This document shows, piece after piece, positions 720-30,254 of a DNA stretch of 64,000 nucleotides. The position numbers and the translations under genes were made by a program. The first letter of the stretch is position 1. Each line of letters begins with the position of its first letter. The stretch covers positions 1,010,177 through 1,074,176 of the forward strand of contig NW_003314316.1 of NCBI RefSeq assembly GCF_000143415.4, given 5' to 3'. This DNA comes from Selaginella moellendorffii (taxonomy: Eukaryota; Plantae; Lycopodiophyta). The notes under the pieces were generated by a model. It did not search any database. It saw only the letters and a program-made list of their open reading frames with translations, and was not told where the DNA came from.

Positions 720-1132
720 TTGAAGCCGAATGGAGGCCGTGACAATCAAGGCCAGACTCGCTGGCGAATGTGCACTGTGTGTGCAGCGGATCGTAGCAGC
801 AAGGCTACTCTGCCACTTACAGTTGGAGAGTGGCGCTGAAATCTCCCGGGATGCCAAGTGGGCTGCGTGTGGGTGGCGGAGTGGGCGGCGGAGTTGGCGG
901 CAAAGTTACAAACTGAAGTGGACGCCGATGCACACGAGTGCGATGCGAGCGCGAGTGTGATGCAAGCGCGAGTGGACGCCAATGCACACGAGAAACCTGT
1001 AGAGAAGGTAGATGAGCGCGAATGTGAGCGTGATCGCGAGTGGGAGCGCGATGCGAGCGCGAGTACGATGCAAAACCTAACCTCACACGCGCGAAATGTC
1101 ACGACGGTTGGTAATCCCGCCACGTCATCATT

Positions 1133-3687: not shown

Positions 3688-6569
3688 ATGGCCTCCGCAA
3701 GTGCGAGGCATGTTCCCTCCGTGGATCTTAAGAACCGTGCTACATGGATTCAGGCAAAGGTGTTTCTAAACAACCCCGAGGGGGAGGTGGTAGCTGAGGG
3801 CTTAGCCACAGTTGTCGATCCAAGAGATGCAGTTGCTAATCAAGAATTGGGCTGGGATGATATTGGAGTTGCGATTTTAGAGGTTGTTGACACAAAAGAA
3901 AACAGTCTGACTATTGGAAGCATTGTGCGGTGGAAATTGAGGCACTTAGTGTTTGAAAATGTGAAGGATTCACAATCAAACACCACTACAACTGATGACA
4001 GAACATCTCTTCATGGGAAAAGAAAGTACACCTTCCTAAAGCGCAGCCAAAGGGATCTAAGAAACGAACCGAAAAGGCAGAAAATGGCGATGGAGGTTCG
4101 AATGGTCTCGACAGTTGTTTGTTGCAAAAGGAGGTGCTGTCAACATGCTGATTGGGATGCTATTGAAGAGGAGAGAGCAAGATACAAGACATTGTCCTGG
4201 AAGGCAGCTCGCAATTTTGTGTATGAGGCATTACGGTCATCTGTTGATGCTTCAGAACATCAGGTGGGGGGCATGGTCTTCCAGAGGGGTTTGGTCTGCA
4301 TGAAGGCATGGAGAATCATTTATGGAGTCCCTCGAACCACATTCTACAGAATCAAAACTGAGTTCGAGGAACAAAGGGTTCAACAGGCAGTCCATGGGAA
4401 CGACGGTACTCACAAAACCAGGGGTCATGTTGTATATGGAGAGGCAATCTTCAAGAGGTTTGTCGAGACATGTAGCGAGCAGCAACCACATAAAACCCGC
4501 CTCTTGGAAGATGGAACTCGAGACACCCAACGAGTTCTCCCTTCCATGTATACCAAGGGGGCCATATTGGAAGATGTGAATCGGGAACTCCAGAGTAATG
4601 GCTACAGGAAGCTGAGCCAATCTAGATTTAGTAGATTGTGGAGCAACAAGTTCAGGGATGTGAGTATAGGAAAGTACTCCAGCTTTTCAAAGTGTGACGA
4701 GTGCACTGCTATGAAAATGGCTTTGTCGAAGAATTCTTGCATCGCTCAAGAGCGAGAGACGTTGGTTAGAAGGCGGCTCAACCACAACATCGAGCAAAGA
4801 AGCTGCAGGACTGCATATTATCATAACAGGATTCTCTCCATGGAGAGACCTAACTCTTACCTCTGCATCATCCATGACAAAATGGACCAGAAAAAGACGT
4901 GCTTACCTCGACTCAATCCTGCCCCCAAGGCAATCTCTTCATCCATGCAGCTGCCTGTGTCTCTGTTTGGCATAATCACTTATGGGCATGGTGCCCAGAA
5001 CTATGGGAACTTCTTTGTACCTCTATGGGGTGGCGGGGGTGCAAACATGATGATTGCATCCCTAGCAAAACACTTAAGGTCTCTGCAAAGTGCGTAGACT
5101 GAGCTGAACGGCCCTTGTCAATCGAACCCCATACAGGGTTTAGCTGGAGGAGGAGCAAAGGCTTGCAGTATCGCGTGGGGCCCCATGCCATCCCAGTGAA
5201 TATGTTGGCCGTCAGATTGTAGGGTTATCACGTGAGGCCTCATGCCATTCCGACGAGGCTGGTTGCCCGGTGAATGCACAGCCTCATCCAAACGAAGCAG
5301 AATCTCAAGGAAGTTCTTGCGGCTGATATGGCCTTCCACCCCATCTTCTGCTCCAAACAGACAATGCTGGCAGTGAGAACAAAAACATGTACGTCTTCGC
5401 GTACTTGGTGATGCTTGTTGCCAAAGGCATATTTGAGACAGTTACACTTGGCTTTCTCATGGTTGGGCACACTCATGAAGACGTCGATGCCATGTTCAGT
5501 CACTTGGCAGAGTCCCTCCGGCGATCCAATGTCCTCACCCTCCCACAACTCTACGATGAATTCCAAAATTGCATCAAAGGCACTGTTGAAGCTGCCCTTG
5601 TGACAGAGGTTCCAGACTTTAAGGGGTTTGTAAGAGGCTACATCAGGGACGGATCCAAAACGCTGATTGGCCACTCCAAGCCTCTTCAGTTTCATTTCAG
5701 CATGCGTGACGGTGCTCCAGTGATGAGGTACAAGATGAGAGAATGGGACACAGTGTGGCTGCCAGTGGACGGCATTGAACTCTTCAAGAGAGATCCCATA
5801 ACTGGGGAACCTATGATTCCTCAGGGTTCCCCACGGCCGATGCACCTGGATGGACTCAAAGACCAAGAAAGTATAGTGGCCGGGATTAGATAGCATATTG
5901 CCTTCTGGAAGAGGGGGTTGGTGTTTGGTGGAGAATCCTATTTTCAGAGGTGCAAGCCTTTGCTCGAATACTGGGAGAAGATTATATCTGCTATCCAAAA
6001 TGGGCCGGTTGTATATGAAGAATTGGAAGAGTCCTTTTGGCCAGAACCCAGAGCACCAGATAGTAGCGAAACAATGTCCTCTGGAAATGCAGTGACAGAT
6101 AACAATGTTGAGGATCACTATTGTGGGCCAAGGAACAAGAAGCCGGATTCAGCATTCAATCCAGTACAGGTCTGCAAAGGACTGGTCGTGCTTGTCAGAC
6201 CCAGTAATAGAAAACAAATGATATGGGTGGGGCGCTGCATCACTTATGCAGAGGAGGACGCGGAAACTAACTCCTTCAATGTAACTGTGGAGTGGTTCAA
6301 GCCAAGTTCCGGATATACGAAGGATTGCCTAGAAAAGAGATGGGTGCTGAATCCAAGGGATCCCAACATGAGCATATCGGTAGATAATGTTGTGCATGGT
6401 TGGATGTGGAAGCAGAGTGCCACCATCACCTTGCCAGACCATGCAAGAGATGCAGCAAGAGCATTCATAACCCGGGTTCAAGGTGAGATTCATTAATATT
6501 CCTTTACTAAGTTTCTAATGTATTTTATTTCAAGGTGAACAATCCGAATCTGAATCAGAGGAGGCGTGA
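3688..6569 (+). pseudogene. Same transposase in copy 1, disrupted
   Basis: Same motifs. TAG at 5095 (shared with copy 2), a 17-bp deletion near 5112 that shifts the frame, and TAG at 5891 (CAG in copy 2). Predicted last intron 6483-6534. Confidence 0.82.
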
Positions 6570-8103
6570 TGGCATGTGGCCTTACGCCATTCCTAGGTGA
6601 GATGATACAAATAACAAGTATAAATTCTTAGTTGTTCTAGCAAATCTTACTTAAAGTTCAAGGTGAACAAGCCGAATATGAATTCATCGGATTGTTATAA
6701 CAAATTGCGAGGTGATGGCATGAGGTGATACGCCATTTGAGAGTGGTAGCCATTCCTATATGAGGTGAGTGAAATATTTATTAGAAATACCTCATTCAAT
6801 TGTGCACTTCTAAGTCTTGGTCCACTCAGTACTGTTTGCATGTTTTTATTTTAATTCTTTCTCTAAAATGTTATTTAGCATGTGGCTTCATGCCATTGCT
6901 CTCCACAATCATGCATTGAATTTTTCTATCCTTGCATAATACTTCTCCATATATATAGCATGTGCGCACATGTGATATGGTTTATTAGGCCTGATATAGT
7001 GTGTGAGGTAAAACAAAGATGATGTGACATATGTATTTACCAATCACAGGTGCATAAATCTAATAATATGGCGTGTGGCCCATATTAATGGCACATAAAC
7101 CCATATTGTGGGCTTACGTGCTTTATGTACCATCATTCCCTTGCAGCGTGTGTGTTGGTTTCCTTTTATAACACAACGAACTCCATATTTTAGGGTGAAG
7201 AGCGTTCTCATGGCAAGCACAAAATCTGTAAGTGAGGCAGAAAAGGAGACGGAGAAGGAGATAGGTGAAGATGTAGAATATATAAGTCTTCCAAACTCCC
7301 CATACTATACTCCAGGTGATCATTTTTCTGAACAAACGGCAACATTAACAACTATCGAAAACGCCCCAGTAACGTCAGAGACAACAATCCAAAGCAAAAC
7401 AACTGACCCGGAGAAGAATGATAGTACCGCTGAGAGTACCAAAAAGGAGGTGTCCACTAGCGCTTAGGCTTATAATAGCGTGTGCCCTCATGCCATTTAC
7501 TTGATCACCAAATACCTTTTTCCCTTTGCACTAGTATATCTTAATACCGGTCTGAGAAATAGAATGGCATTTGCCCTCAGGCCTTTTACTAAATCACCTT
7601 TGAAAGAAATGCAAGCCTCTATGTCGTAAAAAAAAGGTACTAGAGAAATTCCTTAATAATATGAATGTTATTTAGTTTCATGAAAATACACTAAGGGTCA
7701 AATGAGTTAAATGACTTCTCCAGACTAGCAATGCCTCTTGCTACACCTTCACAATTAGATTCGTTAGAAAAAGATAACATTGAATAATATCTAAATGTTC
7801 TCACCATTAAGTTATATGTCTGGCTAATAGGAATGACGTTCATCTTGGAAAGCTCACCACACGCTCAATGAACAAACAAATAGTGTGTGCACGCATGCCA
7901 TCGCTCTTCTTTAGCTTCAGATTCGGCTTGTTCACCTTGACAATGAGATTTATTATACAACCAGATGGACTCAGTCTGGACACAAAGTCACCGTGCTAGT
8001 CACCATGCCCTAGATATGTCTAGCCCCTGGACAAAAAACATATAATTTCACGTCATTTTCAAATACTTGAAAATTTGTACCTAGTCCCATTTTACTGAAT
8101 AAA

Positions 8104-8127
8104 TCCCACTTTAACGAAATAGAGCTT
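8104..8127. repeat. Right terminal inverted repeat (24 bp), copy 1
   Basis: Identical to 29884-29907, and similarity between the copies ends here. Confidence 0.9.
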
Positions 8128-16328: not shown

Positions 16329-16415
16329 AGTGGTCGAATGAGTCTCTAAGTTGGAGAGACTATGCTCCTTAGAGGATGGGCAAGGCATGGTGAGCCTTCA
16401 GTATCAAACCATTGA

Positions 16416-16439
16416 AAGCTCTATTTCGTTAAAGTGGGA
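16416..16439. repeat. Left terminal inverted repeat (24 bp)
   Basis: Perfect reverse complement of 29884-29907 and 8104-8127. Confidence 0.93.
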
Positions 16440-16857
16440 ATTGTCATTATCCCACTTGTAAAATAAGGTTTCCAAACCTTTATATAGTATATAAATATAA
16501 CAAAATTCAACTGCATTGAGGCACATGCCATTTTATTTAAAACAAGGAAATGTCTACTCAATCACTTCTCCTCCCCCTGCCACTGCTTCACCTTTCTCTT
16601 CTCCTTGTCATCGTCATCCAATTTCTTTCCATCCTTTTAATATTGGCTCAGTTGCTGCGAGTCTAGGTGGAGCCCAAGTCCCCATTCAATCTTTACTTTC
16701 CCCTTATTAATAAAACAACTTCGTAGACTTCCAATAACATGCTGTAACACTTCTAGTATAATGCAAATCCTCTCAAAGAATTGTCTTTTAATATTAATAC
16801 AATGGCATGGAACCCCATGCCATAATAAGTTACATTTTTAAATAAATACATGCCATC

Positions 16858-19800
16858 TCAGACTGTTATTTTTTGCCTCCAACGCCTATACAATAATCTT
16901 GGAATTTCATCACTCTCCACACTATCAGGATTTAAACCCAATAGTAATGCCATCTCTTCTCTAATACGTCCATGCTCATGTTCAGTGGTCGAAGAACCCA
17001 TCCGGTTGAGCAGATTATGGAGATGCGGATAGTGTTTGGCTAGACAATATACATGCCATAAATGATGACTGGTGTCTGTCCGATCAAATGGCTTCTGATA
17101 TACCGTTCCATCTGCCATTTGGTTGATTTCTGCAGCCACCTCCTGGACTGGCCGGTTCTCTATCACCATCGCTCCAAGCCGTTTTGCAAGGTCCCCCAGA
17201 ACATACGGTTTCTTCTCCTTAGTTTCCATACTGCAAGAGATGGGGTGCACTGCATATGTGTGCGTGTTCGCTGCAGTTTTAATCGGCGAGTCATCGATGA
17301 TGAGGATTTCACTTGACCTAGCAGTCCGGTTCATCACTACAGCCTCTGGCTTGACGAAGATGGGCTTGCTACCCCTCACATGGACCATAGTCAAGCAATC
17401 CTCCTGCGTTAGGAGAAAGTCAAATGGTAATATTACTTGCGTCTGATCATGCATCATCTGTAGCAACGTTAATGCATTGTGGCGCATCATGGATGTCCAA
17501 ACTCCCAATTGCAAATTGAACTTGGCCCTCTGTTTTAAGTGTAGCATGGTCATTATTAGATCCCGCAGTTTCTCCCATGTGATTAATGTGAATTTGTCTC
17601 TTTTGACAAACTTGCGACCGCAGGCTTTGGAGGGTGCAGTGACATTCGAGGACGAACCACGCTCATGGGAGAAAAGGACACCATTTAGATCAAAAACGAT
17701 ACAGTACCTTCGCTGTGACTCTGAAATGAAATGCGTCATCATAAAACATGGTACAAGTCAATTTTACCATCTACAATATTAGCGAATGGTGCTCCCGATG
17801 GTCGTTGAGAGGGTTTTGGTCGAGGAAACGTGAAGGGTGGAAATACTCTCCTCTGCAATATGGGGTCAATCGCATCCGATGGCGTGTGGGCACATGCCAT
17901 TTCAGCTGTAGACTCTGGTACAACTGGCTCAACAGTGGCATGGGGTGGTTCCGATGGCGTGTGATCACACGCCATTTCAACTGGTGCCTTCGTTGGCAAA
18001 GTGGACATGACCGAACAGGCAGCAGGGGCGGTGTAGGGAGGTTCCAACGGCGCGTAGTCAGACGATTGGGCACACGTTGAGTCCGTTGGAAATGAGGATA
18101 TGACCGGCTCGGCGGCTGGGGCGGCCTCATGTGGGTCCAATGGCACCTGGTCACCGTCAGTTGGATACGTGGACAAGATTGACTCAGTGGTATAGGCAGC
18201 ATCAAGTGGAGCGTGGTCAGCTTGCTTGGCGTTGATATGGATAGTAGCCTCCACCAGCTCTGATGACTCTTGCAGGCAAGTAGAGTCCACTGGCGGATCC
18301 ATATGCATGTCCAAATATCTCCCTTCGATTGAGATGGTATCCTCCCTACTGGCTACTAAAAACAAACTCATTAGCACATTGAATCGACTATACTATATTT
18401 ACCATCAACTGCTATTGAGGAAATAGGACCGATATCACTTGGGCGCACTGCTGATTCTGAAGGATTGGACATACGTTTCGACCCTTGCTTGGCACTATCC
18501 TTCCTCGACACTAAAGGCTAGAGTTTGTATCTTAATTCAACTGAATAATCTCTACTTACCATTTGCTCTGCGACCTACATGGACAATGTTAGAAATGGTA
18601 AAAGGTTAGGAATGGATGTACTATTATTTACCTAATGGTTTGTCTTGTATGACCTTCCTCCCCTGCTCTTTGGCCACCTCAGGCTGGCCATCGTCGTCAT
18701 CATCGTCGTCGTCGTTATTGTGATCATCACCATTGTGAGGACCATCCAAGTCCTCTTCGTCCTCCTCTTCTTTGTCCTCCTCTTCGTCCTTCTGCTCTTC
18801 CTGCTCATTATCTTTCTCTGGCTCCTCATCCCCCTCCTGCATTTCTTCCATAGGCTGCTCACTTGGGAAAATCATCTGGCCGAGTCTCCATCTCAAAATA
18901 CAAGACATCCATAGCCTGTTTTAGTGCGTGACCTAGGACCGTATCCTCACCCGACTGTCTTAACATGGTTTCTGCACGTTCTTGCACCCTTCGAAGACGA
19001 CGAGATGAGAAAAACGTGGCCCTGACTTGAAAAGCATCCCTCATCCATTGTACCTCTCCATTGAGATTAGGGAAGGGGAGTCCGCCATAGGAATCTGAGT
19101 CAGGAGGTGGTGACTGGCTGCTTTCACTCAGCCCTTGATCTGCAATGAATGGCATGAGCACACACGCCATAACCGCGAGGCATTACCTATCATATTTTCG
19201 TTGCCCTTCTTCCTTTTCGAATCAAACGCCTCTGATCCCGACGACTGTCCAACGTGCTTTCGCTTTTTATAACCACTGTCAGTTTGAGCTTGGCTGGTGC
19301 TTGCCTGTTTTGCCTTTGAAGAAGTGTCTCCTGCAAGGAATGGCATGAGACCACACGCCATTGCAAATATAATTTGTACCTCCTTTTTTCCTATTGCTTG
19401 TCTGTTTGTCCTTCTTCGACGCGCCACCAGTGCGCTTTTCAGTCCTCGTGTCTGAATATTCACAACGATCTATAATCAAAATGGCGTGAGGCCTCACGTG
19501 ACCTTACCTTGTGCAGGTTGTGAGCTCGGCCCAACATGGGTATCTTCAACAGTAGCTGTTAACGCCGTTTCAGCATCTGGGGGTGGCCACGCTCCTGCAT
19601 ACAGAGCTTGTGAGATAACATTTAAACTTAAAGTGCGTACTCACCAAGTTCGCAGAGAAGATACTGTTTTTCTTTGGCAACTGTAATTATATGCTCCATT
19701 GAAGTCACCTCTTCAATGGAGTTTGTCACCGCAACACACGGGACACCCTTGAGTAGTGCGGCTTGAAAGAATAGTCCGCCGCAGTTGTACTCGACAACGC

Positions 19801-22443
19801 ATTTGCTCTTAGAGTCGGAAGCAAGTGACCCACCCGCTATTGCGTTGAAGACCCAGCTGAGCATTTCCCATGCTGCACTTGGAGCTTTTTCTGGATTCGA
19901 AAGCTCCATAGCCGTCTTCAGTTCCTCAGGCACGGGTAAATTGACCTCCCTCAGATCAATTCGATCGGCCTTGTCGAACGAAGCTGGGAAGTCACTCCAG
20001 TCCCACTCTACTGCAGGACCAATAACAAGGGTGAGTGTGAAGATGCGGACATTTGTCGGTATCTTCTTCTTAGCCATTATCCCATGGATCTCCCGCATCT
20101 CCTTGCCTTTCAACCGAGCCTTCACCTCGTTCAAGGCCTTCCAGAACTTGTGATAGGATTCAGAGTCATAGATCATATAGTGGACTAAAGATTTCACCTC
20201 CGCAAGTCCCACCATTAAGTCAATGATGGAGCTGACTTCGTCTGCATGAGTGATCTCCTCGTTTGTGAAGTCCATCACACAAAAGATGTTCTTGACCTGC
20301 TCATCTCCGCGGGAAACGATGCTCCTCCACCTTTGATCCTCATCCGAATTCACGTATACCCGGTAAGGTTCTCGATAGGCCTCTGCTGCGGGGTCAAGCT
20401 GTTTCTGAAGCCGGCGGTCGACATCCCTCTTAATGAAATTTGGATACTGATCCAACTTCTCAGCTTTACTTTTCGTGGCATCCCGCAGCAGATCGATGAA
20501 CTTGGGGGCCCCCTTCATGTACTCGTCGATGTCTTCATTTGACAACTCCAACTCTTCCATCATCTCTTGCGTGGTGTCGATGCTCACCCTCTCCACAGCC
20601 ACTTGCTCGAAGATCCAATCCTTCAATAGCGCACGAGCTCTCAGAGTCGTGCACAAGTCCTCGTATGTCACAATATGGCCGGGAGTCATTTTGGTCTTGT
20701 TGAAGACTACCTCACCACGTAGAAGAGCATTAGCCACTGTCAGAAGGTCGTCGTCGTCTAGAGACCGCGAGAAATGCAAGGCGTTGAGCTTCAAATCATT
20801 GGGCTTCCGGCCGTCCTCCACACCCATTGAGTTTAGCAACTCCCCGTCATGGTACCTCCTCAGCACATCTACCCATTTGTCAAAAACAACTTTTGTCGCG
20901 AGTAGAATGTTATGGATGCTGAGTGTGTCATTGACCCCCAATGTTTTCGAGAGAAGACTCGAGAATTCCTGCAATGGAAATGGCGTGAGGCCACATGCTA
21001 TGCCACATGCAACGAGGCTTACCTGCCAGGCGCTAGTTGCTAATGCACGTCCTTGTCCTGGTTTTTGTGGCTTCTTCAGTTGAACCCAGAGCTTCCGTGT
21101 TCGTGCCAATGTCTCATGCAGACCCGATTTGTAGCACGTTTCTTGCTTGACATTCTGCGCGTGGGAGATGTATATGATAGATCGGAGGGGCGAATTGCCT
21201 TTTATCAGGCGGACAACTCTTGTCTTGAAGACTTTCTTCACCTCCTCGCCCACTATAATATCCACAACTATCTCTTGCATCGCCAAGCTAGAATGCTGCC
21301 CGGAGACGGCATAGAACCGGATGTTCTGATCGTCCAACACCTTCCTATTGATCAAGTCTGGAAACCTCGTCTCGCCCTTCATTGTTCGGTAGTAGGGGAT
21401 CACGTCTGCGATGTCAGGTGTTACTGGACTTGCCAGCATCTTCTGCTTCAGTTTCTCCACCCACTCATCAGATACTAGCCTGTGGTTGTATTTGCTTTGG
21501 ATGTCGATACGGCTCACGTCGATTGTATATACTTTGTTGGAATAGTAACAAGTACTATTATCTACGACGATTTTTGCTGCCTCTTCTTGCTCTTTCTGCT
21601 CTTTGCGGCTCTTCTTTTTGGTGGGTGTAGTGTTCGAACCCGAGGCAATGGCATCACCGAGTAGCTTCTTTTTTGGAGCAGGAGAGTCGGACGTCGGCTT
21701 GAGCTTGACCACCCTTTTCTGCTTCGGGGTAGTTTCCAGATCGACCCCCTTCCCCTTAGCTTCGCGAACTGGAGGCATTCTCAACGGCTCAATGTTGGAA
21801 TATAGTTTTTGAACATCGCCGTAGGTGAGGTCCGTGGATTCCATGTGATCTTCATAGACCCGCAGCGTCTTTGAAATTGTGGGCCTCCTAGACAACCTCT
21901 CCCTAGCTCCCTCTAGGAATTCCTCATAGCCGCTGCCCCCCTCCGGGAAGCCGCTAGGATGTGCAAGGTGGATCTTGAAGGCGGACGCTGTCTCTACCAC
22001 AAGTGCCAGTCCATATTCTTGCATGGAACTGCATGGAGTGTCTGTCACTTGGATGAGGATCCCCATGCATTCTTTTCTCCCACCATCTGTGTTGTATAGC
22101 CTCAGATCCTCGCCTTCCATCCCGAAAGTCCAACTGATGAGCTCCTCCCCCTTCTTTGCATCCACATTGACAGTGGCTGGAAGAAGAACGCAATTCCTCG
22201 CCTGTTCAGAAATGCACAACAATTAGAGCTGACAGATGAAAAGCTAGCAGCTGGAAATAACGTGAGGCCACACGCCATTCACCACTGCATCAGATGTCTT
22301 GAGGCTGCATCCTAAGATGGCGTGAGGCTACACGCCATCTGTAACCGGACTGCACTCAAGAGCCCAATCGGTGCATGCCAATGTTGCTACTGAATGGCAT
22401 GTGGCCTCATGCCATTTTCTACTTGGCCTAAAAGACTTACCAT
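16858..22443 (-). CDS. Transposon accessory gene, 11 predicted exons, ~1630 aa: ParB/Srx-like + degenerate amino-MTase-like + low-complexity/acidic + FCP1/HAD phosphatase-like domain; one apparent 1-bp frameshift near 18865
   Basis: Predicted exons: 22443-22441, 22201-21023, 20968-19645, 19594-19508, 19451-19380, 19330-19187, 19139-18632, 18574-18560, 18510-18403, 18355-17768, 17720-16858. All introns are GT-AG, 47-57 nt except the first (239 nt). Phases are consistent except the 508-nt exon (+1 nt). Motifs: IDVSRIDI..NHRLVSDEWVEKLK..FYAVSGQHS; IVFDLNGVLF..VWTSM..ILIIDDSPIK. Confidence 0.72.
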
Positions 22444-22856
22444 TTGAAGCCGAATGGAGGCCGTGACAATCAAGGCCAGACTCGCTGGCGAATGTGCACT
22501 GTGTGTGTAGCGGATCGTAGCAGCAAGGCTACTCTGCCACTTACAGTTGGAGAGTGGCACTGAAATCTCTCGGGACGCCAAGTGGGCTGTGTGTGGGTGG
22601 TGGAGTGGGCGGCGGAGTTGGCGGCGAAGTTATAAACTGAAGTGGACGCCGATGCACACGAGCGTGATGCGAGCGCGAGTGTGATGCAAGTGCGAGTGGA
22701 CGCCAATGCACACGAGAAACCTGTAGAGAAGGTAGATGAGCGCGAATGTGAGTGTGATCGCGAGTGGGAGCGCGATGTGAGCGCGAGTACGATGCAAAAC
22801 CTAACCTCACACGCGTGAAATCTCATGACGGTTGGTAATCCCACCACGTCATCATT

Positions 22857-23529
22857 TGTAGCGCACCTTATCTCTCTCCCCTTAAGCCAACTGGAAAAGG
22901 GGCAATTGCTTGATGAGAGAGCCCTTAGTGGCTATTTTATCCCCATTTATCCCCCAAGGTTCCAAGGATCCACGGTGACAATATATCCAAATCTCATCCC
23001 ATGATCACATGCGCTACACTCACCCCCCCTTCAGAGATGTCAATGTCCTCATTGACTATTGACTAACAACCCCTACTGAGCCAAGGGGAACCAGCACCTC
23101 CATTTCCGCACTCAATCTACCAATCCTTCCATTGTGTAGACCAGCTATTCCATGTGAGGCAACTAGTCATCCACCCGTACCGCAGTCCCACGATGGATAC
23201 CTTTGTCCGTGGATACTCCACACAAGAGGAAGGACGTACGCATGGATGTCCACTACATACGATTTCAAATTTAGGGGTAGGAATATACCTTGCTCAAGGG
23301 TATATTATATTTTAGGTAGCCACTAATCAATGGGAATCGAACCCGTGCCATTTGCTCTGATACCAACTGTAGCGCACCTTATCTCTCTCCCCTTAAGCCA
23401 ACTGGAAAAGGGGCAATTGCTTGATGAGAGAGCCCTTAGTGGCTATTTTATCCCCATTTATCCCCCAAGGTTCCAAGGATCCACGGTGACAGTATATCCA
23501 AATCTCATCCCATGATCACATGCGCTACA
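22857..23529 (-). mobile_element. TRIM nested at the same site in copy 2
   Basis: LTRs 22857-23018 and 23368-23529, TSD TCATT, same PBS and PPT. Confidence 0.92.
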
Positions 23530-24136
23530 TCATTCCTCGGACTTGGGCGCCACCATTAATTTCTGGATCGCCACGCGCATGCATGCACGTGAAATCCAAA
23601 AGAAATCCGCAACGTCATCATTCCTCGGACTGCATGCACGCGAAATCCAAAAGAAAGATCATGATTGGGATATCATTTAATACCCTCGCTATATTTATAC
23701 CATGCATGATTGGATATTCCAAAGCATCTTGTATTTCCAAAAATGCCAGATGTTCAACTAAATAAAGAATGGTATACAATGTCCTTCTTGATGACCCTGC
23801 AAAGAAGCATCTGGATCGAACACCACATGAGACCACACGAGCCTTACAATGTTTCAGGGGCATTTGCCATAGATCCGACCGTTATTTTGCTCCAAGATTC
23901 TACAGTTTGGTGTGCATTGACCTTTCCATCGACACTGCAAAGGGACATCACAATCAGATGTGGGATCACAAGAAACCAACTTCACTAACTCTAGTTTCAC
24001 CAAGATCTACGTAAGGAGTTATGAAATGAAAGGACCCTCTCTATTGAAATGTGTTTATGGTCCTAGGGGCATTGTGACATATCAAAGGATTTTACATCAA
24101 GTTCTGTATTTGCATGTTTATCAAGCTACTGAATTG

Positions 24137-24156
24137 CTAAACCCTAAACCCTAAAC
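24137..24156. promoter_or_regulatory. Telo-box-like (CCCTAAA)n short repeat between the divergent transposon genes
   Basis: ctaaaccctaaaccctaaac, also at 2374-2393. Function not demonstrated. Confidence 0.35.
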
Positions 24157-25450
24157 ATGTGGCAAATGCTGCATGAAGAAAGATGCCCTTTCTGGGCAAA
24201 TGCTGTAAGAGGCAGATGCCGAGCAGATGTATCTCAGGCTAGTGAAGGGGACAAACGAAAGCTAGCTATAAACATGACGGGATGCAAATAGATTACTAGG
24301 CTGGTCCTGCGAAAATCAAAAACCATAATTGAAAACATTGAAAATGCAAAAAGAAAGGTTTATAATATTTTTGAATTTTAAGCAACCAAAGGAATGTAAG
24401 TAGGGCATGTGTTTGTAAGTTTAAAAATGCCTCAACCACTTAAATTCCCAAGTAAATAAAGCTGTTTCTATTTTTGGTACAGGTAAACTTTATAGCGTGT
24501 GGGCTCATGCAATTTTGAACCCAAAAATGCACCAAAAAATGCTCGACTAGCATTATTCTTTGAATGGCGTGTGGCCTTATATTGCCATAAATGGACATAC
24601 ACACACAGCATAATTATTCCTTTACACGGCGAATAATCTTGGCGCGGATCGCTGACATGGCATGGCAAAGTTCGAATCACTGACATGGCACAGCTGGATC
24701 GAAGCAAGGACATGATGTGATAAAGTTCAACCTCCGACAGCAAAATCTAGAAGCTACTCAGTTTGAAATTTGTCAGAGGAATCATAAGATCTGGTTTGTC
24801 AAAGGATTTGATGTGACGTTCAAGTGTGTGTTATTTTTGAATTCTCGAACTCATTCCTAGGTCTATCATTTTTGTGCGCCGTGTTCTTGGTTCCGCTGAG
24901 CGCAGTGAGCGCTGCTTGTGTAAGCGGCGTTGTGAGCTGTGGTTTATGCGTCTACGAGCGGTTGCGGCATTGCGAGCGCCATTGCGAGCGACAGTTTATG
25001 CGAGTGGCAGTTTGTGCGAGCGGTGCTACGAGCAGTTACGGTGTTGCGAGCGGCGCTACGAGTAGTTGCGGTGTTGCAAGCGGCACTGTCTTTGGTGTGG
25101 CTACCACTTCCTCTTGATATTCGGCACTTGTGCTTCCTGGTATGTTCACCATGGAATGGCTTAGGACCACATTTAGAAATGACATGAGGCCACATGCCAT
25201 CTTGGGCCCTTGCAATTTCATGGCTAGCGTATTGTCATGTATGTTTTTACTTGCCTACAGCTGTGTGTATATCAAGATGGCATGAGGCCTCATGCCAATT
25301 TTGTGAATGCGAAATTTCACGTGGGTGTCAATAGCATGTTTGAATAATGGCATGTGGCCTCATGCTATTGAGGTTGTTTGGTATGTTATGATTTAGGCCA
25401 TTCTCCAATCATTTTTTGTATGGTCTTAACTTCTTTTCTGCACTTTCAGA

Positions 25451-28349
25451 ATGGCCTCCGCAAGTGCGATGCATGTTCCCTCCGTGGATCTTAAGAACCG
25501 TGCTACATGGATTCAGGCAAAGGTGTTTCTAAACAACCCCAAGGGGGAGGTGGTAGCTGAGGGCTTAGCCACAGTTGTCGATCCAAGAGATGCGGTTGCT
25601 AATCAAGAATTGGGCTGGGATGATATTGGAGTTGCGATTTTAGAGGTTGTTGACACAAAAGAAAACAGTCTGACTATTGGAAGCATTGTGCGGTGGAAAT
25701 TGAGGCACTTAGTGTTTGAAAATGTGAAGGATTCACAATCAAACACCACTACAACTGATGACAGAACATCTCTTCATGGGAAAAGAAAGTACACCTTCCT
25801 AAAGCGCAGCCAAAGGGATCTAAGAAACGAACCGAAAAGGTAGAAAATGGCGATGGAGGTTCGAATGGTCTCGACAGTTCCTTGTTGCAAAAGGAGGTGC
25901 TGTCAACATGCTGATTGGGATGCTATTGAAGAGGAGAGAGCAAGATACAAGACATTGTCCTGGAAGGCAGCTCGCAATTTTGTGTATGAGGCATTACGGT
26001 CATCTGTTGATGCTTCAGAACATCAGGTGGGGGGCATGGTCTTCCAGAGGGGTTTGGTCTGCATGAAGGCATGGAGAATCATTTATGGAGTCCCTCGAAC
26101 CACATTCTACAGAATCAAAACTGAGTTCGAGGAACAAAGGGTTCAACAGGCAGTCCATGGGAACGACGGTACTCACAAAACCAGGGGTCATGTTGTATAT
26201 GGAGAGGCAATCTTCAAGAGGTTTGTCGAGACATGTAGCGAGCAGCAACCACATAAAACCCGCCTCTTGGAAGATGGAACTCGAGACACCCAACGAGTTC
26301 TCCCTTCCATGTATACCAAGGGGGCCATATTGGAAGATGTGAATCGGGAACTCCAGAGTAATGGCTACAGGAAGCTGAGCCAATCTAGATTTAGTAGATT
26401 GTGGAGCAACAGGTTCAGGGATGTGAGTATAGGAAAGTACTCCAGCTTTTCAAAGTGTGACGAGTGCACTGCTATGAAAATGGCTTTGTTGAAGAATTCT
26501 TGCATCGCTCAAGAGCGAGAGACGTTGGTTAGAAGGCGGCTCAACCACAACATCGAGCAAAGAAGCTGCAGGACTGCATATTATCATAACAGGATTCTCT
26601 CCATGGAGAGACCTGACTCTTACCTCTACATCATCCACGACAAAATGGACCAGAAAAAGACGTGCTTACCTCAACTCAATCCTACCCCCAAGGCAATCTC
26701 TTCATCCATGCAGCTGCCTGTGTCTCTGTTTGGCATAATCGCTCATGGGCATGGTGCCCAAAACTATGGGAACTTCTTTGTACCTCTATGGGGTGGCGGG
26801 GGTGCAAACATGATGATTGCATCTCTAGCAAAACACTTAAGGTCTCTTCAAAGTGCGTAGACTGAGCTGAACGGCCAACCCTTGCATAAGGCCCTTGTCG
26901 ATCAAACCCCATACAGGGTTCAGCTGGAGGAGGAGCAAAGGCTTGCAGTATCGCGTGGGGCCCCATGCCATCCCAGTGAATATGTTGGCCGTCAGATTGT
27001 AGGGTTATCACGTGAGGCCTCATGCCATTCCGACGAGGCTGGTCGCCCGGTGAATGCACAGCCTCATCCAAACGAAGCAGAATCTCAAGGAAGTTCTTGC
27101 GGCCGATGTGGCCTTCCACCCCATCTTCTGCTCCAAATAGACAATGCTGGCAGTGAGAACAAAAACATGTACGTCTTCGCGTACTTGGCGATGCTTGTTG
27201 CCAAAGGCATATTTGAAACGGTTACACTTGGCTTTCTCATGGTTGGGCACACTCATGAAGACGTCGATGCCATGTTCAGTCACCTGGCAGAGTCCCTCTG
27301 GCGATCCAATGTCCTCACCCTCCCACAACTCTACGATGAATTCCAAAATTGCATCAAAGGCACTGTTGAAGCTGCACTTGTGACAGAGGTTCCAGACTTT
27401 AAGGGGTTTGTAAGAGGCTACATCAGGGACGGATCCAAAACGCTGATTGGCCACTCCAAGCCTCTTCAGTTTCATTTCAGCATGCGTGACGGTGCTCCAG
27501 TGATGAGGTACAAGATGAGAGAATGGGACACAGTGTGGCTGCTAGTGGACGGCATTGAACTCTTCAAGAGAGATCCCATAACTGGGGAACCTATGATTCC
27601 TCAGGGTTCCCCACGGCCGATGCACCTGGATGGACTCAAAGACCAGGAAAGTATAGTGGCCGGGATTAGACAGCATATTGCCTTCTGGAAGAGGGGGTTG
27701 GTGTTTGGTGGAGAATCCTATTTTCAGAGGTGCAAGCCTTTGCTCGAATACTGGGAGAAGATTATATCTGCTATCCAAAATGGGCCGGTTGTATATGAAG
27801 AATTGGAAGAGTCCTTTTGGCCAGAACCCAGAGCACCAGATAGTAGCGGAACAATGTCCTCTGGAAATGCAGTGACAGATAACAATGTTGAGGATCACTA
27901 TTGTGGGCCGAGGAACAAGAAGCCGGATTCAGCATTCAATCCAGTACAGGTCTGCAAAGGACTGGTCGTGCTTGTCAGACCCAGTAATAGAAAACAAATG
28001 ATATGGGTGGGGCGCTGCATCACTTATGTAGAGGAGGACGCGGAAACTAACTCCTTCAATGTAACTGTGGAGTGGTTCAAGCCAAGTTCCGGATATACGA
28101 AGGATTGCCTAGAAAAGAGATGGGTGCTGAATCCAAGGGATCCCAACATGAGCATATCGGTGGATAATGTTGTGCATGGTTGGATGCGGAAGCAGAGTGC
28201 CACCATCACCTTGCCAGACCATGCAAGAGATGCAGCAAGAGCATTCATAACCCGGGTTCAAGGTGAGATTCATTAATATTCCTTTATTAAGTTTCTAATG
28301 TATTTTATTTCAAGGTGAACAATCCGAATCTGAATCAGAGGAGGCGTGA
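25451..28349 (+). pseudogene. Sola1/DUF7869-like DDD transposase (~948 aa reconstructed) with two in-frame TAG stops
   Basis: ORFs 25451-25843, 25847-26860 and 26882-28276 share one frame. Motifs: CCKRRC, CDEC, HDKMDQKKT, LLLQIDNAGSENKN, FLMVGHTHEDVDAMFS. TAG at 25841 (CAG in copy 1) and at 26858. A predicted last intron 28263-28314 is followed by exon GEQSESESEEA*. Confidence 0.82.
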
Positions 28350-28989
28350 TGGCATGTGGCCTTACACCATTCCTAGGTGAGATGATACAAATAACAAGTA
28401 TAAATTCTTAGTTGTTCTAGCAAATCTTACTTAAAGTTCAAGGTGAACAAGCCGAATATGAATTCATCAGATTGTTATAACAAATTGCGAGGTGATGGCA
28501 TGAGGCGATACGCCATTTGAGAGTGGTAGCCATTCCTATATGAGGTGAGTGAAATATTTATTAGAAATACCTCATTCAATTGTGCATTTCTAAGTCTTGG
28601 TCCACTCAGTACTGTTTGCATGTTTCTATTTTAATTTTTTCTCTAAAATGTTATTTAGCATGTGGCTTCATGCCATTGCTCTCCACAATCATGCATTGAA
28701 TTTTTCTATCCTTGCATAATACTTCTCCATATATATAGCATGTGCGCACATGTGATATGGTTCATTAGGCCTGATATAGTGTGTGAGGTAAAACAAAGAT
28801 GATGTGACATATGCATTTACCAATCACACATGCATAAATCTAATAATATGGCGTGTGGCCCATATTAATGGCACATAAACCCATATTGTGGGCTTATGTG
28901 CTTTATGTACCATCATTCCCTTGCAGCATGTGTGTTGGTTTCCTTTTATAACACAACGAACTCCATATTTTAGGGTGAAGAGCGTTCTC

Positions 28990-29247
28990 ATGGCAAGCAC
29001 AAAATCTGTAAGTGAGGCAGAAAAGGAGACGGAGAAGGAGATAGGTGAAGATGTAGAATATATAAGTCTTCCAAACTCCCCGTACTATACTCCAGGTGAT
29101 CATTTTTCTGAACAAACGGCAACATTAACAACTATTGAGAACGCCCCAGTAACGTCAGAGACAACAATCCAAAGCAAAACAACTGACCCGGAGAAGGATG
29201 ATAGTACCACTGAGAGTACCAAAAAGGAGGTGTCCACTAGCGCTTAG
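28990..29247 (+). CDS. Small acidic Ser/Thr-rich ORF (85 aa) near the right end of the transposon, function unknown
   Basis: MASTKSVSEAEKETEKE... is open in both copies (7210-7467 in copy 1) and preceded by a candidate ttttag acceptor. Confidence 0.3.
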   Translation: MASTKSVSEAEKETEKEIGEDVEYISLPNSPYYTPGDHFSEQTATLTTIENAPVTSETTIQSKTTDPEKDDSTTESTKKEVSTSA

Positions 29248-29883
29248 GCTTATAATGGCGTGTGCCCTCATGCCATTTACTTGATCACCAAATACCTTTT
29301 TCCCTTTGCACTAATATATTTTAATACCGGTCTGAGAAATAGAATGGCATGTGCCCTCAGGCCTTTTACTAAATCACCTTTGAAAGAAATGCAAGCCTCT
29401 ATGTCGTAAAAAAAAGGTACTAGAGAAATTCCTTAATAATATGAATGTTATTTAGTTTCATGAAAATACACTAAGGGTCAAATGAGTTAAATGACTTCTC
29501 CAAACTAGCAATGCCTCTTGCTACACCTTCACAATTAGATTCGTTAGAAAAAGATAACATTGAATAATATCTAAATGTTCTCACCATTAAGTTATATGTC
29601 TGGCTAATAGGAATGACGTTCATCTTGGAAAGCTCACCACACGCTCAATGAACAAACAAATAGTGTGTGCGCGCATGCCATCGCTCTTCTTTAGCTTCAG
29701 ATTCGGCTTGTTCACCTTGACAATGAGATTTATTATACAACCAGATGGACTCAGTCTGGACACAAAGTCACCACGCTAGTCACCATGCCCCAGATATGTC
29801 TAGCCCCTGGACAAAAAACATATAATTTCACGTCATTTTCAAATACTTGAAAATTTGTACCTAGTCCCATTTTACTGAATAAA

Positions 29884-29907
29884 TCCCACTTTAACGAAAT
29901 AGAGCTT
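29884..29907. repeat. Right terminal inverted repeat (24 bp), copy 2
   Basis: TCCCACTTTAACGAAATAGAGCTT followed by TSD TTGA. Confidence 0.93.
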
Positions 29908-30254
29908 TTGACGAATATTGGCAAGGGACCAAGGATGGAAAGGGTAATACAAATTGGTACTACTTTATAAAATAGTTTATCATTCGATGAGGACATCGAA
30001 CTTCGTCTATGGGTGGTGAAGTTGTGAGACATAAAATTCCTAGGCCCCAAAGTGGAGCCGGAAGGGTGCCACGTGGTAGTGGCCAAAGAGAAAACCAAAC
30101 GAGCGTAACATGTTTGGACTAAAAGCTCCTACTTGAAGGGTCGAGAGCGGGAGTGAAACTCCCGACGAAGTGCTCAAGGAACAAGCACGGAGCAAGCAAT
30201 AAGTGAGTCTCGAGAAAAGGGACACAAAAGGACCAACACATGACATGTGGAAGT

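What the first reader, a model, noticed from the sequence alone, without database searches (positions are those of the whole stretch)
16416..29907. Complete 13.5-kb Sola-like transposon built as a three-part system: transposase, ParB-type multidomain partner and dispersed palindromic sites
Seen: perfect 24-bp TIRs, a 4-bp TSD, two divergent genes and about 25 internal palindromes. Established: a DN..ENKN / F...GHT..D DDD core with a 4-bp TSD fits Sola1-type elements, which are usually a few kb long and encode mainly a transposase. Inference: this is a large cargo-bearing plant family whose second gene and repeated sites work together. The layout recalls bacterial ParB/parS and might serve synapsis of the ends, autoregulation or anti-silencing. 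I do not know of a description of this architecture, but could not check.
Basis: partly seen in the sequence, partly recalled or inferred. Interest (0 to 1): 0.92.

Follow-up and report, generated by a model that had tools for sequence, protein, structure and literature searches.

The report
Sola1 transposon carrying ParB-like partner gene
This is a 13.5-kb cut-and-paste transposon of the known Sola1 kind in a non-seed plant genome; besides its now-broken transposase it carries a large second gene with a bacterial ParB-like fold and about two dozen copies of one 22-bp palindrome, which looks like a built-in protein/binding-site module that I could not find described.

Summary
The element at 16416-29907 has perfect 24-bp TIRs, a TTGA duplication, two divergent genes and about 24 copies of one 22-bp palindrome found only inside this family. 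A second, truncated copy (97.7% identical) lies at 1-8127. "Complete" is true of the structure only, because the transposase ORF has two in-frame TAG stops.

The transposase is Sola1-type: Pfam DUF7869, a DN..ENKN/GHT..D core matching published Sola1-1_AP, and a 4-bp TSD.

The partner is one long multi-exon gene (22222 to 16858, minus strand). It has eight predicted phase-1 mini-introns, three of which consist mostly of a palindrome. It encodes a ParB/sulfiredoxin-fold domain, a degenerate N6/N4 DNA-methylase-like remnant and an FCP1/NIF-like domain. Riccia has the same architecture in one annotated protein.

Every relative of the partner gene with enough flank sits among its own multi-copy palindromes. 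Two of three transposase-only relatives do too, and one of them has a clearly homologous ATGGC-type site. The two genes were never found together elsewhere.

The palindromes are therefore most likely cis sites for an element-encoded protein, but which protein binds them is unresolved. Verdict: a known superfamily with an undescribed accessory module. It is interesting, and the function is unproven.

The parts
16412..16415 (.). Left copy of the 4-bp target-site duplication, TTGA
   Evidence: identical to 29908-29911
16416..16439 (+). Left 24-bp terminal inverted repeat
   Evidence: 0 mismatches to the right TIR
16858..22222 (-). Accessory (partner) gene, multi-exon. The 864-codon first ORF (19628-22222) continues through predicted introns to 1059 codons. 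After one unresolved frame break at about 18860-18908, a further 616-codon spliced ORF runs to the stop at 16858.
   Evidence: Riccia homologue P0064 has the same domains in one annotated protein.
21023..21550 (-). ParB/sulfiredoxin-fold domain of the accessory protein (residues about 225-400). The conserved motif F.A(I/V)SGQHS is at 21287-21316 and lacks the arginine of ParB GxxR / DndB DGQHR.
   Evidence: alignments A1/A2; AlphaFold + Foldseek; no Pfam, NCBIfam or PDB sequence hit
19775..20284 (-). Degenerate beta-class (N6/N4) DNA-methylase-like remnant. FCVMDFTNEE (20255-20284) sits where DPPY is expected. VVEYNCGG..ALLKG (from 19798 downward) sits where the SAM-binding motif I is expected.
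   Evidence: Homologues P0064 and the L010 ORF hit Pfam N6_N4_Mtase at 5.8e-4 and 1.6e-3, and M.RsrI (1eg2) at 0.007. No (D/S)PP(Y/F) motif occurs in any family member. The window protein itself gives no hit.
19140..19644 (-). Four predicted GT-AG phase-1 mini-introns: 19644-19595, 19507-19470, 19379-19331 and 19186-19140 (50, 38, 49, 47 nt). The last three each consist mostly of one palindrome.
   Evidence: removing them keeps the ORF open to codon 1059
17721..18631 (-). Four more predicted GT-AG phase-1 introns: 18631-18575, 18559-18511, 18402-18356 and 17767-17721. They join the acidic tract, a 15-nt micro-exon, a proline-rich region and the NIF-like exon in one frame.
16858..17720 (-). FCP1/NIF-like (CTD-phosphatase-like) domain, last exon. 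The catalytic motif reads DLNGV at 17671-17700 (second Asp replaced by Asn). The DD motif is at 17284-17307.
   Evidence: Pfam NIF 2.5e-5, 24.5 bits against a cut-off of 21.8; motif coordinates
22257..22415 (.). Cluster of three palindromes just upstream of the accessory gene
25179..25368 (.). Cluster of three palindromes 80-270 bp upstream of the transposase ATG
17879..17975 (.). Two palindromes inside coding sequence of the accessory gene, each read as EMAC(D/A)HTPS
20980..21001 (.). Single palindrome inside the first exon of the accessory gene. Other single sites lie at 16802-16823 and 24492-24513, and a weak one at 16510-16531.
26950..27028 (.). Two palindromes inside the variable linker of the transposase coding sequence. 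Calypogeia L006 has one in the same linker.
28349..29681 (.). Seven palindromes in the 3' part of the element: 28349, 28495, 28655, 28735, 29255, 29344, 29660
22852..23534 (-). Nested TRIM-like miniature LTR retroelement. It has 162-bp LTRs (22857-23018 and 23368-23529, 99.4% identical, TG..CA ends), the PBS TGGTATCAGAGC and a 5-bp TSD TCATT. Copy A has it too, so it is part of the family.
25451..28276 (+). Sola1-type transposase, a single exon of about 941 codons. It is broken by TAG at 25841-25843 and at 26858-26860. Cys-rich motif 25883-25909; HTH-like GVPRTTFYRIK 26087-26119; DDD core: D1 26630-26659, D2 27134-27166, D3 27245-27268.
29884..29907 (-). Right 24-bp terminal inverted repeat
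29908..29911 (.). Right copy of the TSD, TTGA
1..8127 (+). Second copy of the same family (copy A), cut off by the window start. It is 97.7% identical to 21725-29907 and its right TIR is at 8104-8127. It has more stops in the transposase and deletions of 39 and 17 bp.

Best explanation
The region is one integrated Sola1-superfamily cut-and-paste DNA transposon of a non-seed land plant. A DDD (RNase-H-like) transposase acts on the 24-bp TIRs and makes a 4-bp duplication. That much is shown by anatomy and homology.

The element also carries a second, multi-exon gene. Its product combines a ParB/sulfiredoxin-fold domain with a following helical region, a catalytically degenerate N6/N4 DNA-methylase-like remnant, acidic and proline-rich linkers, and an FCP1/NIF-like domain with an altered catalytic motif. 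The domain calls are shown; any activity is inferred.

The roughly 24 dispersed 22-bp two-fold-symmetric sites (ATGGCGTG-N6-CACGCCAT) are inferred to be cognate binding sites for a dimeric element-encoded protein. The accessory protein is the slightly favoured binder. On this reading the module works like plasmid RK2 KorB with its dispersed OB operators, or like ParB/parS. The protein would load on site clusters at the two divergent promoters and on sites spread through introns, exons and the 3' region. It would then set the transcription of both genes and/or gather the 13.5-kb element into one nucleoprotein complex that helps pair the distant ends. The CTD-phosphatase-like tail is a plausible link to RNA polymerase II.

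This particular copy is no longer autonomous, because its transposase has two nonsense codons. The family was recently active: copies differ by about 2%, and an internal-deletion derivative exists.
For: Transposon identity:
- TIR, TSD and boundary.
- DUF7869 and Sola1 core.
- Deletion derivative L001.

One integrated unit rather than a nest: the same palindrome occurs in both promoters, in introns and exons of the accessory gene, inside the transposase coding linker and near the right end.

ParB/Srx fold: the full-length model has pLDDT 70-94 over residues 220-610, and the top 30 PDB matches are all ParB/Noc/KorB/Srx/PadC. The domain model has pLDDT 79, pTM 0.68 and rmsd 3.5-4.4 A over 110-134 columns.

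Architecture conserved in Riccia P0064 (ParB-like + N6_N4_Mtase part + NIF).

Link between partner gene and palindromes. Every locus with a relative of the partner gene and at least 2.1 kb of sequence has its own multi-copy palindrome:
- L009: CTTCGGGACGCGTCCCGAAG, 14 copies.
- L010: GCCTCGAGAnnnTCTCGAGGC, 14 copies.
- L005: GCTCGAGAGnCTCTCGAGC, 7 copies in 2.1 kb.
- L002: one copy.
L009 and L010 have no transposase within +/-10 kb. Palindrome type tracks the ParB-like subgroup: the three CTCGAGA-type loci have the most similar proteins, at 44-46% identity.

Site clusters lie within about 300 bp upstream of both genes.
Against: - Two transposase-only relatives also carry multi-copy palindromes without any detectable ParB-like gene. 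L008 has 20 copies, and its site ATGGCTATGTGGCCAT is clearly homologous to ATGGCATGTGGCC here. L006 has 7 copies, one in the same transposase linker. This fits the transposase as the binder at least as well.
- The two genes were not found together in any other locus.
- No sequence-level match to ParB exists, and the conserved motif lacks the Arg needed for CTP binding in ParB.
- The methylase remnant has no catalytic DPPY. The NIF motif is DLNGV.
- No binding, expression or splicing data exist, and the introns are predictions.
- Between the two window copies the palindromes have diverged at least as fast as the rest (9 differences in about 352 bp against 1.6% overall). This is expected for dead copies but gives no sign of constraint.
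Confidence: 0.4

Rival explanations
1. The palindromes are binding sites of the Sola1 transposase itself, through its N-terminal Cys-rich/HTH region. They would act like the repeated subterminal motifs of En/Spm or Ac. The ParB-like gene is cargo with another role, or none, and the liverwort ParB-like loci are non-autonomous relatives that keep the cis sites.
For: ATGGC-type palindromes are shared by this element and by L008, whose transposase is 40% identical. L008 shows no ParB-like gene in 5.1 kb upstream. L006 has 7 palindromes with an ATGG core and no ParB-like gene within 8-10 kb, and one of its sites lies in the same transposase linker as here. The transposase has a conserved HTH-like segment.
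Against: The TIRs contain no half-site, and the sites are spread over the whole element rather than concentrated at the ends. L009, L010 and L005 have palindromes with a ParB-like gene and no transposase. The distant transposase relative L007 has no palindrome family.
Confidence: 0.35
2. The accessory gene is a passively carried, decaying acquisition (a captured or horizontally acquired ParB-methylase-like gene) with no role in the element. Its association with palindromes reflects only shared descent of whole elements.
For: Catalytic motifs of all three domains are degenerate. The gene has hardly any detectable relatives: 16 hits, best 4e-10, among 1.84 billion representatives. There is one unresolved frame break.
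Against: About 1,650 codons stay open across eight introns in a copy whose transposase already has two stops. The domain order is conserved between this plant and Riccia at about 25% identity. Copy A keeps the first 166 codons open.
Confidence: 0.12
3. The palindromes act at the DNA or RNA structure level. They could be cruciforms or hairpins that define mini-introns, trigger or evade small-RNA silencing, or spread as tiny insertions. No dedicated binding protein would be involved.
For: Three consecutive 38-49-nt introns consist mostly of one palindrome each. Sites inside coding sequence are always read in one frame per gene.
Against: There are no duplications or extended homology around the sites. 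The half-site consensus has a fixed spacing. Clusters lie upstream of both genes. Different families keep different but equally symmetric motifs.
Confidence: 0.08
4. This is a chimaera: two unrelated mobile elements, one nested in the other, that only look like one unit.
For: Relatives of the two genes occur apart in liverworts. One true nested element, the TRIM, is present.
Against: The same palindrome family is found on both sides and inside both genes. No internal TIR or TSD pair separates the halves. Copy A shares the same junctions over 8.1 kb.
Confidence: 0.05

Closest known systems
Sola1 DNA transposons (Sola superfamily; Bao et al. 2009, as cited in PMC3845634, PMC9033089, PMC9804982; RNase-H clade E.10 of Majorek et al. 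2014)
   Same: The DDD core has DNxGxxN(K/R)N and GHT motifs. The TSD is 4 bp. The TIR shares TATTT..AAAGTGG with insect Sola1 TIRs at the same offset from the end. The family occurs in non-seed plants.
   Different: It is 13.5 kb rather than a few kb. It has a second, roughly 1,650-codon multi-exon gene and about 24 internal palindromes. The target TTGA (other flanks TTTT, AAAG) does not fit the AWWT preference reported for insect Sola1.
En/Spm (CACTA) two-gene system: TnpD transposase plus TnpA, which binds repeated 12-bp motifs (own knowledge)
   Same: A transposase plus a second element-encoded protein, with many copies of a short motif in the element, often as inverted pairs. Autoregulation and end-pairing are the proposed roles.
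   Different: It is a different superfamily with a 3-bp TSD. The En/Spm motifs are subterminal only. TnpA is not ParB-like, and both En/Spm products come from one transcription unit.
Plasmid RK2 KorB with its dispersed OB operators, and ParB/parS or Noc/NBS systems (PDB 8qa8/8qa9, 6sdk, 7ol9 among the fold matches)
   Same: ParB/Srx fold followed by a helical region. Many copies of one short palindrome are dispersed over a mobile replicon, some promoter-proximal.
   Different: There is no sequence-level homology. The Arg of the CTP-binding GxxR motif is absent. The host is a eukaryote. The protein is fused to methylase-like and phosphatase-like parts. Binding is untested.
Phage and plasmid ParB-DNA-methylase fusions and their eukaryotic descendants (Iyer, Zhang and Aravind 2016, PMC4738411)
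   Same: A ParB-type module is linked to an N6/N4-type methylase module. Independent transfers of such genes into eukaryotes are documented.
   Different: The documented eukaryotic cases are in haptophytes, chlorophytes and chytrids and belong to other methylase clades. Here the catalytic tetrapeptide is lost, the gene sits in a land-plant transposon, and it ends in an FCP1-like domain.
PIF/Harbinger elements (transposase plus Myb-like DNA-binding partner; own knowledge)
   Same: Two separately encoded proteins, one being a DNA-binding helper.
   Different: The partner fold is different, there are no dispersed palindromes, and the TSD is 3 bp.

Membership tests
Sola1 transposons | DDD transposase with the Sola1-type RNase-H-like core | tested here: met
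   Pfam DUF7869 at 5e-40. A 49-aa Sola1-1_AP core fragment from the Majorek 2014 supplement hits only DUF7869 (E 0.0056) and aligns to DNAGSENKN...GHTH. The D1 context IIHDKMDQKK..P resembles FDLEKVLTTP of Sola1-1_AP.
Sola1 transposons | 4-bp target-site duplication | tested here: met
   TTGA on both sides of the only copy with both ends. The boundary is fixed by three insertions.
Sola1 transposons | AWWT target preference (called a hallmark in PMC3845634) | tested here: inconclusive
   None of three flanks (TTGA, TTTT, AAAG) fits AWWT. Three sites cannot establish a preference, and the rule comes from animal families.
Sola1 transposons | Sola1-like termini | tested here: inconclusive
   The local alignment to the insect Sola1 TIR (TATTT..AAAGTGG..GT.CATT) is reached by 158 of 5000 shuffles.
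Sola1 transposons | Placement inside the Sola1 clade in a tree with Repbase/Dfam entries, and whether this family is already catalogued | not testable with these tools
   Repbase and Dfam are not available here.
ParB/sulfiredoxin superfamily | ParB/Srx N-terminal fold | tested here: met
   Foldseek on two models gives ParB, Noc, KorB, PadC, Srx and SbnI for almost all top 40 matches, with probability up to 1.0 and rmsd 3.5-4.4 A.
ParB/sulfiredoxin superfamily | Sequence match to ParBc-type profiles | tested here: not met
   No hit in Pfam, NCBIfam, PHROGs or PDB-sequence searches, with single sequences or with profiles.
ParB/sulfiredoxin superfamily | Arginine of the GxxR / DGQHR nucleotide-binding motif | tested here: not met
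   The family motif is (S/D)GQH(S/T/L), with no Arg in 12 of 12 aligned sequences.
ParB/sulfiredoxin superfamily | Specific binding to a palindromic centromere-like or operator site | not testable with these tools
   Only co-occurrence with family-specific palindromes could be shown.
Beta-class N6/N4 DNA methyltransferases (Pfam N6_N4_Mtase) | SAM-binding motif I region (HP.qKP ... DPF.GSG) | tested here: inconclusive
   Riccia P0064 scores 5.8e-4 and the Calypogeia L010 ORF 1.6e-3, both below the Pfam cut-off. M.RsrI scores 0.007. The window protein keeps only VVEYNCGG..ALLKG and gives no hit.
Beta-class N6/N4 DNA methyltransferases (Pfam N6_N4_Mtase) | Catalytic (D/S)PP(Y/F/W) motif | tested here: not met
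   Absent from all family members; D(L/F/A)T stands in its place.
FCP1/SCP (NIF) phosphatases | NIF domain match above the curated cut-off | tested here: met
   24.5 bits against 21.8, E 2.5e-5. The Riccia homologue scores 24.8 bits.
FCP1/SCP (NIF) phosphatases | Catalytic DxDx(T/V) motif | tested here: not met
   It reads DLNGV: the second Asp is Asn. The later T/S, K and DD motifs are present.

The most novel reading that the evidence does not exclude
A lineage of plant Sola1 transposons has taken up a prokaryote-style ParB/parS-like module. A ParB-fold, methylase-derived, CTD-phosphatase-like protein recognises family-specific palindromes that the element plants in its promoters, its coding linkers and even its own mini-introns. 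The element uses this to control its transcription, pair its ends or escape silencing. The same gene-plus-palindrome module also lives on its own in liverwort genomes.
Probability: 0.3. Interest if true: 0.85.

Novelty: new variant of a known kind. Interest (0 to 1): 0.66.

Why it matters
Sola is one of the least studied cut-and-paste superfamilies, and nothing is known about its accessory factors or cis requirements. If the partner protein or the transposase really binds these palindromes, this would be a tractable eukaryotic case of a transposon with a dedicated multi-site DNA-binding system. It would have a clear bacterial analogue (KorB/OB, ParB/parS) and possibly a bacterial or phage origin (a ParB-methylase fusion).

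It would also give a concrete example of binding sites housed in mini-introns. The CTD-phosphatase-like tail suggests a direct handle on the host transcription or silencing machinery. All of this can be tested with a 22-bp oligonucleotide and two recombinant protein fragments.

Tried and rejected
1. Introns as the explanation for the two transposase stops. Rejected. Copy A has CAG at the first stop, and two other copies (P0017, P0056) have CAG at both. The region around the second stop is conserved as protein in 40-44%-identical homologues.

2. An upstream exon of the transposase, suggested by the first 83 residues of P0056. It is not present in the window.

3. The k-mer homologue search with the 864-aa ORF found nothing. 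The exhaustive search gave only 16 weak hits.

4. Sequence and profile searches of the partner protein against Pfam, NCBIfam, PHROGs and PDB gave no ParB hit.

5. More copies for TSD statistics. The TIR scan of metagenome contigs found nothing. P0056 is not on record.

6. More loci of the partner gene from metagenomes. Alignment A1 was too divergent. With A2 there were 124 pattern matches and none was confirmed.

7. Element ends in the liverwort loci. The TIR+TSD search gave only artefacts inside long inverted repeats. No nucleotide similarity exists between any two loci.

8. The NIF-like ORF has one weak homologue only and no tblastn similarity to the Riccia NIF exon.

9. No tRNA genes were found. 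The 4-mismatch palindrome hit at 23330 is the tRNA-like part of the nested TRIM.

10. The frame break at about 18860-18908 could not be closed by any GT-AG intron I tried.

11. Host species were not identified. The best clues are the liverwort and Selaginella relatives and the very short introns.

Full report
**Observation.** The coordinates are right. A perfect 24-bp inverted repeat (AAGCTCTATTTCGTTAAAGTGGGA) lies at 16416-16439 and 29884-29907, and TTGA flanks the element on both sides. The same terminus occurs a third time at 8104-8127. Window positions 1-8127 are a second copy of the family, cut off by the window start and 97.7% identical to 21725-29907. A third, internally deleted copy was found in a public read assembly (L001, run ERR10900155). 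There the transposase gene is joined directly to the last ~150 bp of the element. The three right ends all stop at ...GAGCTT and continue with different DNA (TTGA, TTTT, AAAG). This fixes the boundary and, with it, the 4-bp duplication.

Of the 134 substitutions between the two window copies, 123 are transitions. This is the signature expected of methylated, silenced plant repeats.

**The palindromes.** With the pattern ATGGCRTGNGNNCNCAYGCCAT and up to 2 mismatches there are 33 sites in the window, all inside the two copies, against none in shuffled sequence. With looser matching there are about 24 credible sites in 16416-29907.
- The consensus is aATGGCRTGWGG|CCWCAYGCCATt.
- Nothing is conserved beyond one base on either side, so these are discrete sites and not pieces of a longer repeat.
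- The R/Y positions are CpG/TpG alternatives, so the ancestral half-site was probably ATGGCGTG.
- The 8-mer half-site is about 15 times denser inside the element than outside.

The sites are placed as follows:
- three within about 200 bp upstream of the minus-strand gene (22257-22415);
- three 80-270 bp upstream of the transposase ATG (25179-25368);
- two inside the transposase coding linker (26950, 27007);
- seven in the 3' part of the element;
- the remainder inside the minus-strand gene.

**The transposase.** ORFs 25451-25843, 25847-26860 and 26882-28276 are in one frame. The two TAG codons between them are nonsense mutations and do not mark introns. Copy A has CAG at the first. Two further copies (P0017; P0056, UniParc UPI0003239915) have CAG at both. 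The protein around the second stop is conserved in 40-44%-identical homologues. This copy therefore cannot make transposase, and copy A is more decayed still.

The C-terminal half is Pfam DUF7869 (5e-40). Homologues are mostly unnamed metagenome or Logan proteins plus liverwort proteins from Riccia sorocarpa and Calypogeia fissa.

The link to Sola1 comes from the alignment supplement of Majorek et al. 2014 (PMC3985635). It gives the core of Sola1-1_AP as ...FDLEK...SDNCGGQNRN...LERGHTQS. A 49-residue piece of it hits only DUF7869 in all of Pfam, and it aligns to DNAGSENKN...GHTH here. The Sola2 and Sola3 cores in the same file look different.

The TIR also resembles the insect Sola1 TIR given in PMC3845634 (TATTT..AAAGTGG at the same distance from the tip). 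Statistically this is only suggestive: 158 of 5000 shuffles reach the same score. The AWWT target preference reported there is not seen in the three flanks available. Sola elements in non-seed plants, including Physcomitrella Sola1, are already in the literature.

**The partner gene.** The 864-codon ORF (19628-22222, minus strand) has no Pfam, NCBIfam, PHROG or PDB-sequence match. It has only 16 weak relatives among 1.84 billion representative proteins.

The relatives share a block with the pattern IPV..I...P....R.....V......M....P..AD.(V/I)P......F.A(I/V)SGQHS..AA. An AlphaFold model built on this alignment is confident over residues 220-610. A 176-residue domain model has pLDDT 79 and pTM 0.68. 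In both, nearly all the best PDB matches are ParB, Noc, KorB, PadC, sulfiredoxin or SbnI, with rmsd 3.5-4.4 A over 110-134 positions. Two caveats apply: there is no sequence-level match, and the arginine of the ParB GxxR motif is missing.

The gene is much larger than the ORF. On the minus strand the stop at 19628 lies in a 50-nt GT-AG intron. Three more introns of 38, 49 and 47 nt follow, and removing them keeps the frame open to codon 1059. Each of the last three introns consists mostly of one palindrome. Further downstream four more GT-AG introns (57, 49, 47, 47 nt) join four segments into one 616-codon frame:
- an acidic tract;
- a 15-nt micro-exon;
- a proline-rich segment containing two in-frame palindromes, each read as EMAC(D/A)HTPS;
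- the NIF-like ORF at 16858-17742.

All eight predicted introns are phase 1 with G before the donor. One frame break at about 18860-18908 remains unexplained.

Independent support for the single-gene model comes from Riccia sorocarpa KAL3675584.1 (P0064, 1064 aa). It belongs to the same 90% cluster as a ParB-like hit and contains, in this order, the ParB-like block, a match to the C-terminal SAM-binding part of Pfam N6_N4_Mtase (5.8e-4; M.RsrI 1eg2 at 0.007) and a NIF domain. A Calypogeia ORF next to a ParB-like exon gives the same methylase match (1.6e-3).

In the window protein only VVEYNCGG..ALLKG remains of this motif. No family member has the catalytic DPPY. The NIF domain passes the Pfam cut-off, but its catalytic motif reads DLNGV. 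The product therefore combines a ParB-fold domain, a methylase-derived and probably inactive part, and a CTD-phosphatase-like and possibly inactive part. ParB-methylase fusions are typical of phages and plasmids and have entered eukaryotes several times (PMC4738411), which suggests where the gene came from.

**Do the three parts belong together?** I looked at eight related loci.

Relatives of the partner gene:

| Locus | Source | Palindrome | Copies | Transposase nearby |
|---|---|---|---|---|
| L009 | Riccia | CTTCGGGACGCGTCCCGAAG | 14 | none within +/-10 kb, even with a profile HMM |
| L010 | Calypogeia | GCCTCGAGAnnnTCTCGAGGC | 14 | none within +/-10 kb, even with a profile HMM |
| L005 | 2.1 kb contig | GCTCGAGAGnCTCTCGAGC | 7, flanking the ORF on both sides | contig too short to tell |
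| L002 | 1.6 kb contig | related in sequence | 1 | contig too short to tell |
| L004 | 2 kb contig | none | 0 | contig too short to tell |

The three CTCGAGA-type loci (L010, L005, L002) have the most similar ParB-like domains.

Relatives of the transposase:

| Locus | Source | Palindrome | Copies | ParB-like gene |
|---|---|---|---|---|
| L008 | transposase 40% identical | CCTATGGCTATGTGGCCATAGG, partly in a 153-bp tandem array | 20 upstream of the gene | none detected |
| L006 | Calypogeia | CACGAACCATGGTTCGTG | 7, one in the same transposase linker as here | none detected |
| L007 | Riccia, 25% identical | none | 0 | none detected |

The L008 site matches the site here in 13 of 14 positions (ATGGC-ATGTGGCC).

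Family-specific palindromes therefore go with each gene separately, and the two genes were seen together only in the window's family. Within that family they form one unit, because the same site occurs in both promoters, in both genes and near the right end.

**Mechanism.** Shown:
- a Sola1-type cut-and-paste element, recently active and now with a dead transposase in this copy;
- a conserved multi-domain partner gene;
- a dense, element-specific set of symmetric 22-bp sites, with clusters in front of both genes.

Inferred: the sites are bound by a dimeric element-encoded protein. I slightly favour the partner protein as the binder (0.40). The reasons are that ParB-fold and methylase-derived proteins are classic readers of palindromes, and that its relatives carry palindromes even where no transposase is near. 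The closest working model is KorB with its dispersed operators on plasmid RK2. The transposase as binder is almost as likely (0.35), because the ATGGC-type site is conserved in an element that shows no partner gene. Structural or RNA-level roles, passive cargo and a chimaeric nest are less likely. Each is given with its evidence in the rival list.

**Comparison and novelty.** Membership in Sola1 is well supported, and Sola1 is a known superfamily already reported from non-seed plants. I found nothing in the searchable literature on three features:
- the ParB-fold/methylase-like/FCP1-like partner gene;
- the family-specific dispersed palindromes;
- the palindrome-filled mini-introns.

I could not consult Repbase or Dfam, so the family may be catalogued there. 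I rate the finding as a new variant of a known kind. It is interesting because a 22-bp oligonucleotide and two protein fragments would settle the mechanism.

**Host.** Not identified. The clues are the closest transposase relatives in liverworts, the best hit of the partner protein in Selaginella moellendorffii GL377575.1 (a fragment between ordinary genes), introns of 38-57 nt, and about 45% G+C. Together these point to a lycophyte or bryophyte.

Noticed in passing
window 22852-23534: A 673-bp TRIM-like miniature LTR retroelement is nested in the spacer between the two genes, on the minus strand. It has 162-bp LTRs with TG..CA ends (1 difference), a tRNA-iMet-type primer-binding site followed by a tRNA-like stretch, and the 5-bp duplication TCATT. 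It is shared by copy A (1133-1805), so it travels with the family.
   Followed up: partly
window 1-8127: A second, truncated copy of the same Sola1 family lies 8.3 kb upstream in the same orientation. It has 134 substitutions (123 of them transitions), deletions of 39 bp (corresponding to 23978-24016) and 17 bp (26873-26889), and three extra stops in the transposase.
   Followed up: yes
window 16858-19644: All eight predicted introns of the partner gene are phase 1, 38-57 nt long and preceded by G. Three of them are little more than a palindrome between splice sites. It is unexplained whether the palindromes created these introns or were placed in them.
   Followed up: partly
window 18860-18908: There is a frame break between the 1059-codon and the 616-codon parts of the partner gene. 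No GT-AG intron I tried closes it. It is either a frameshift in this copy or a splice I missed.
   Followed up: partly
window 45632-49405 and 42527-44442: A copia-type LTR retrotransposon has an uninterrupted 1257-codon gag-pol ORF on the minus strand. Beside it is a second, fragmented copia pol on the plus strand (rve, SH3_retrovirus, RVT_2).
   Followed up: partly
window 30040-30772: A low-complexity stretch directly right of the element gives long ORFs of Ser-Asp / Leu-Gly repeats on the minus strand. It is probably a microsatellite-like array and not a gene.
   Followed up: no
L001 1-3577 (Logan ERR10900155): An internal-deletion derivative of the same family. The transposase gene, truncated after about 630 codons, is joined to the last ~150 bp and the right TIR (2193-2216). 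Such derivatives are typical of abortive gap repair after excision.
   Followed up: partly
L008 2768-3957: In a related Sola1-like element the palindromes sit in a tandem array of about 153-bp units upstream of the transposase. In L005, L010 and L009 the partner-gene palindromes form arrays with 27-, 35- and ~59-bp spacing.
   Followed up: partly
L009 3530-5023 and 15632-17505 (Riccia sorocarpa CM100801.1): The Riccia ParB-like/NIF gene is flanked by an inverted duplication of about 1.5 kb (73-87% identical) that includes NIF exons, so a second NIF gene faces it. These could be long terminal inverted repeats of a carrier element. L007 (the Riccia DUF7869 locus) also has two nested pairs of long inverted repeats.
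   Followed up: no
L003 9983-11425 (Selaginella moellendorffii GL377575.1): An annotated 451-aa gene between ArfGap and VQ genes matches only the tail of the ParB-like domain and the C-terminal half of the partner protein. It has no palindromes and no transposase nearby, so it may be a domesticated or decayed fragment.
   Followed up: partly
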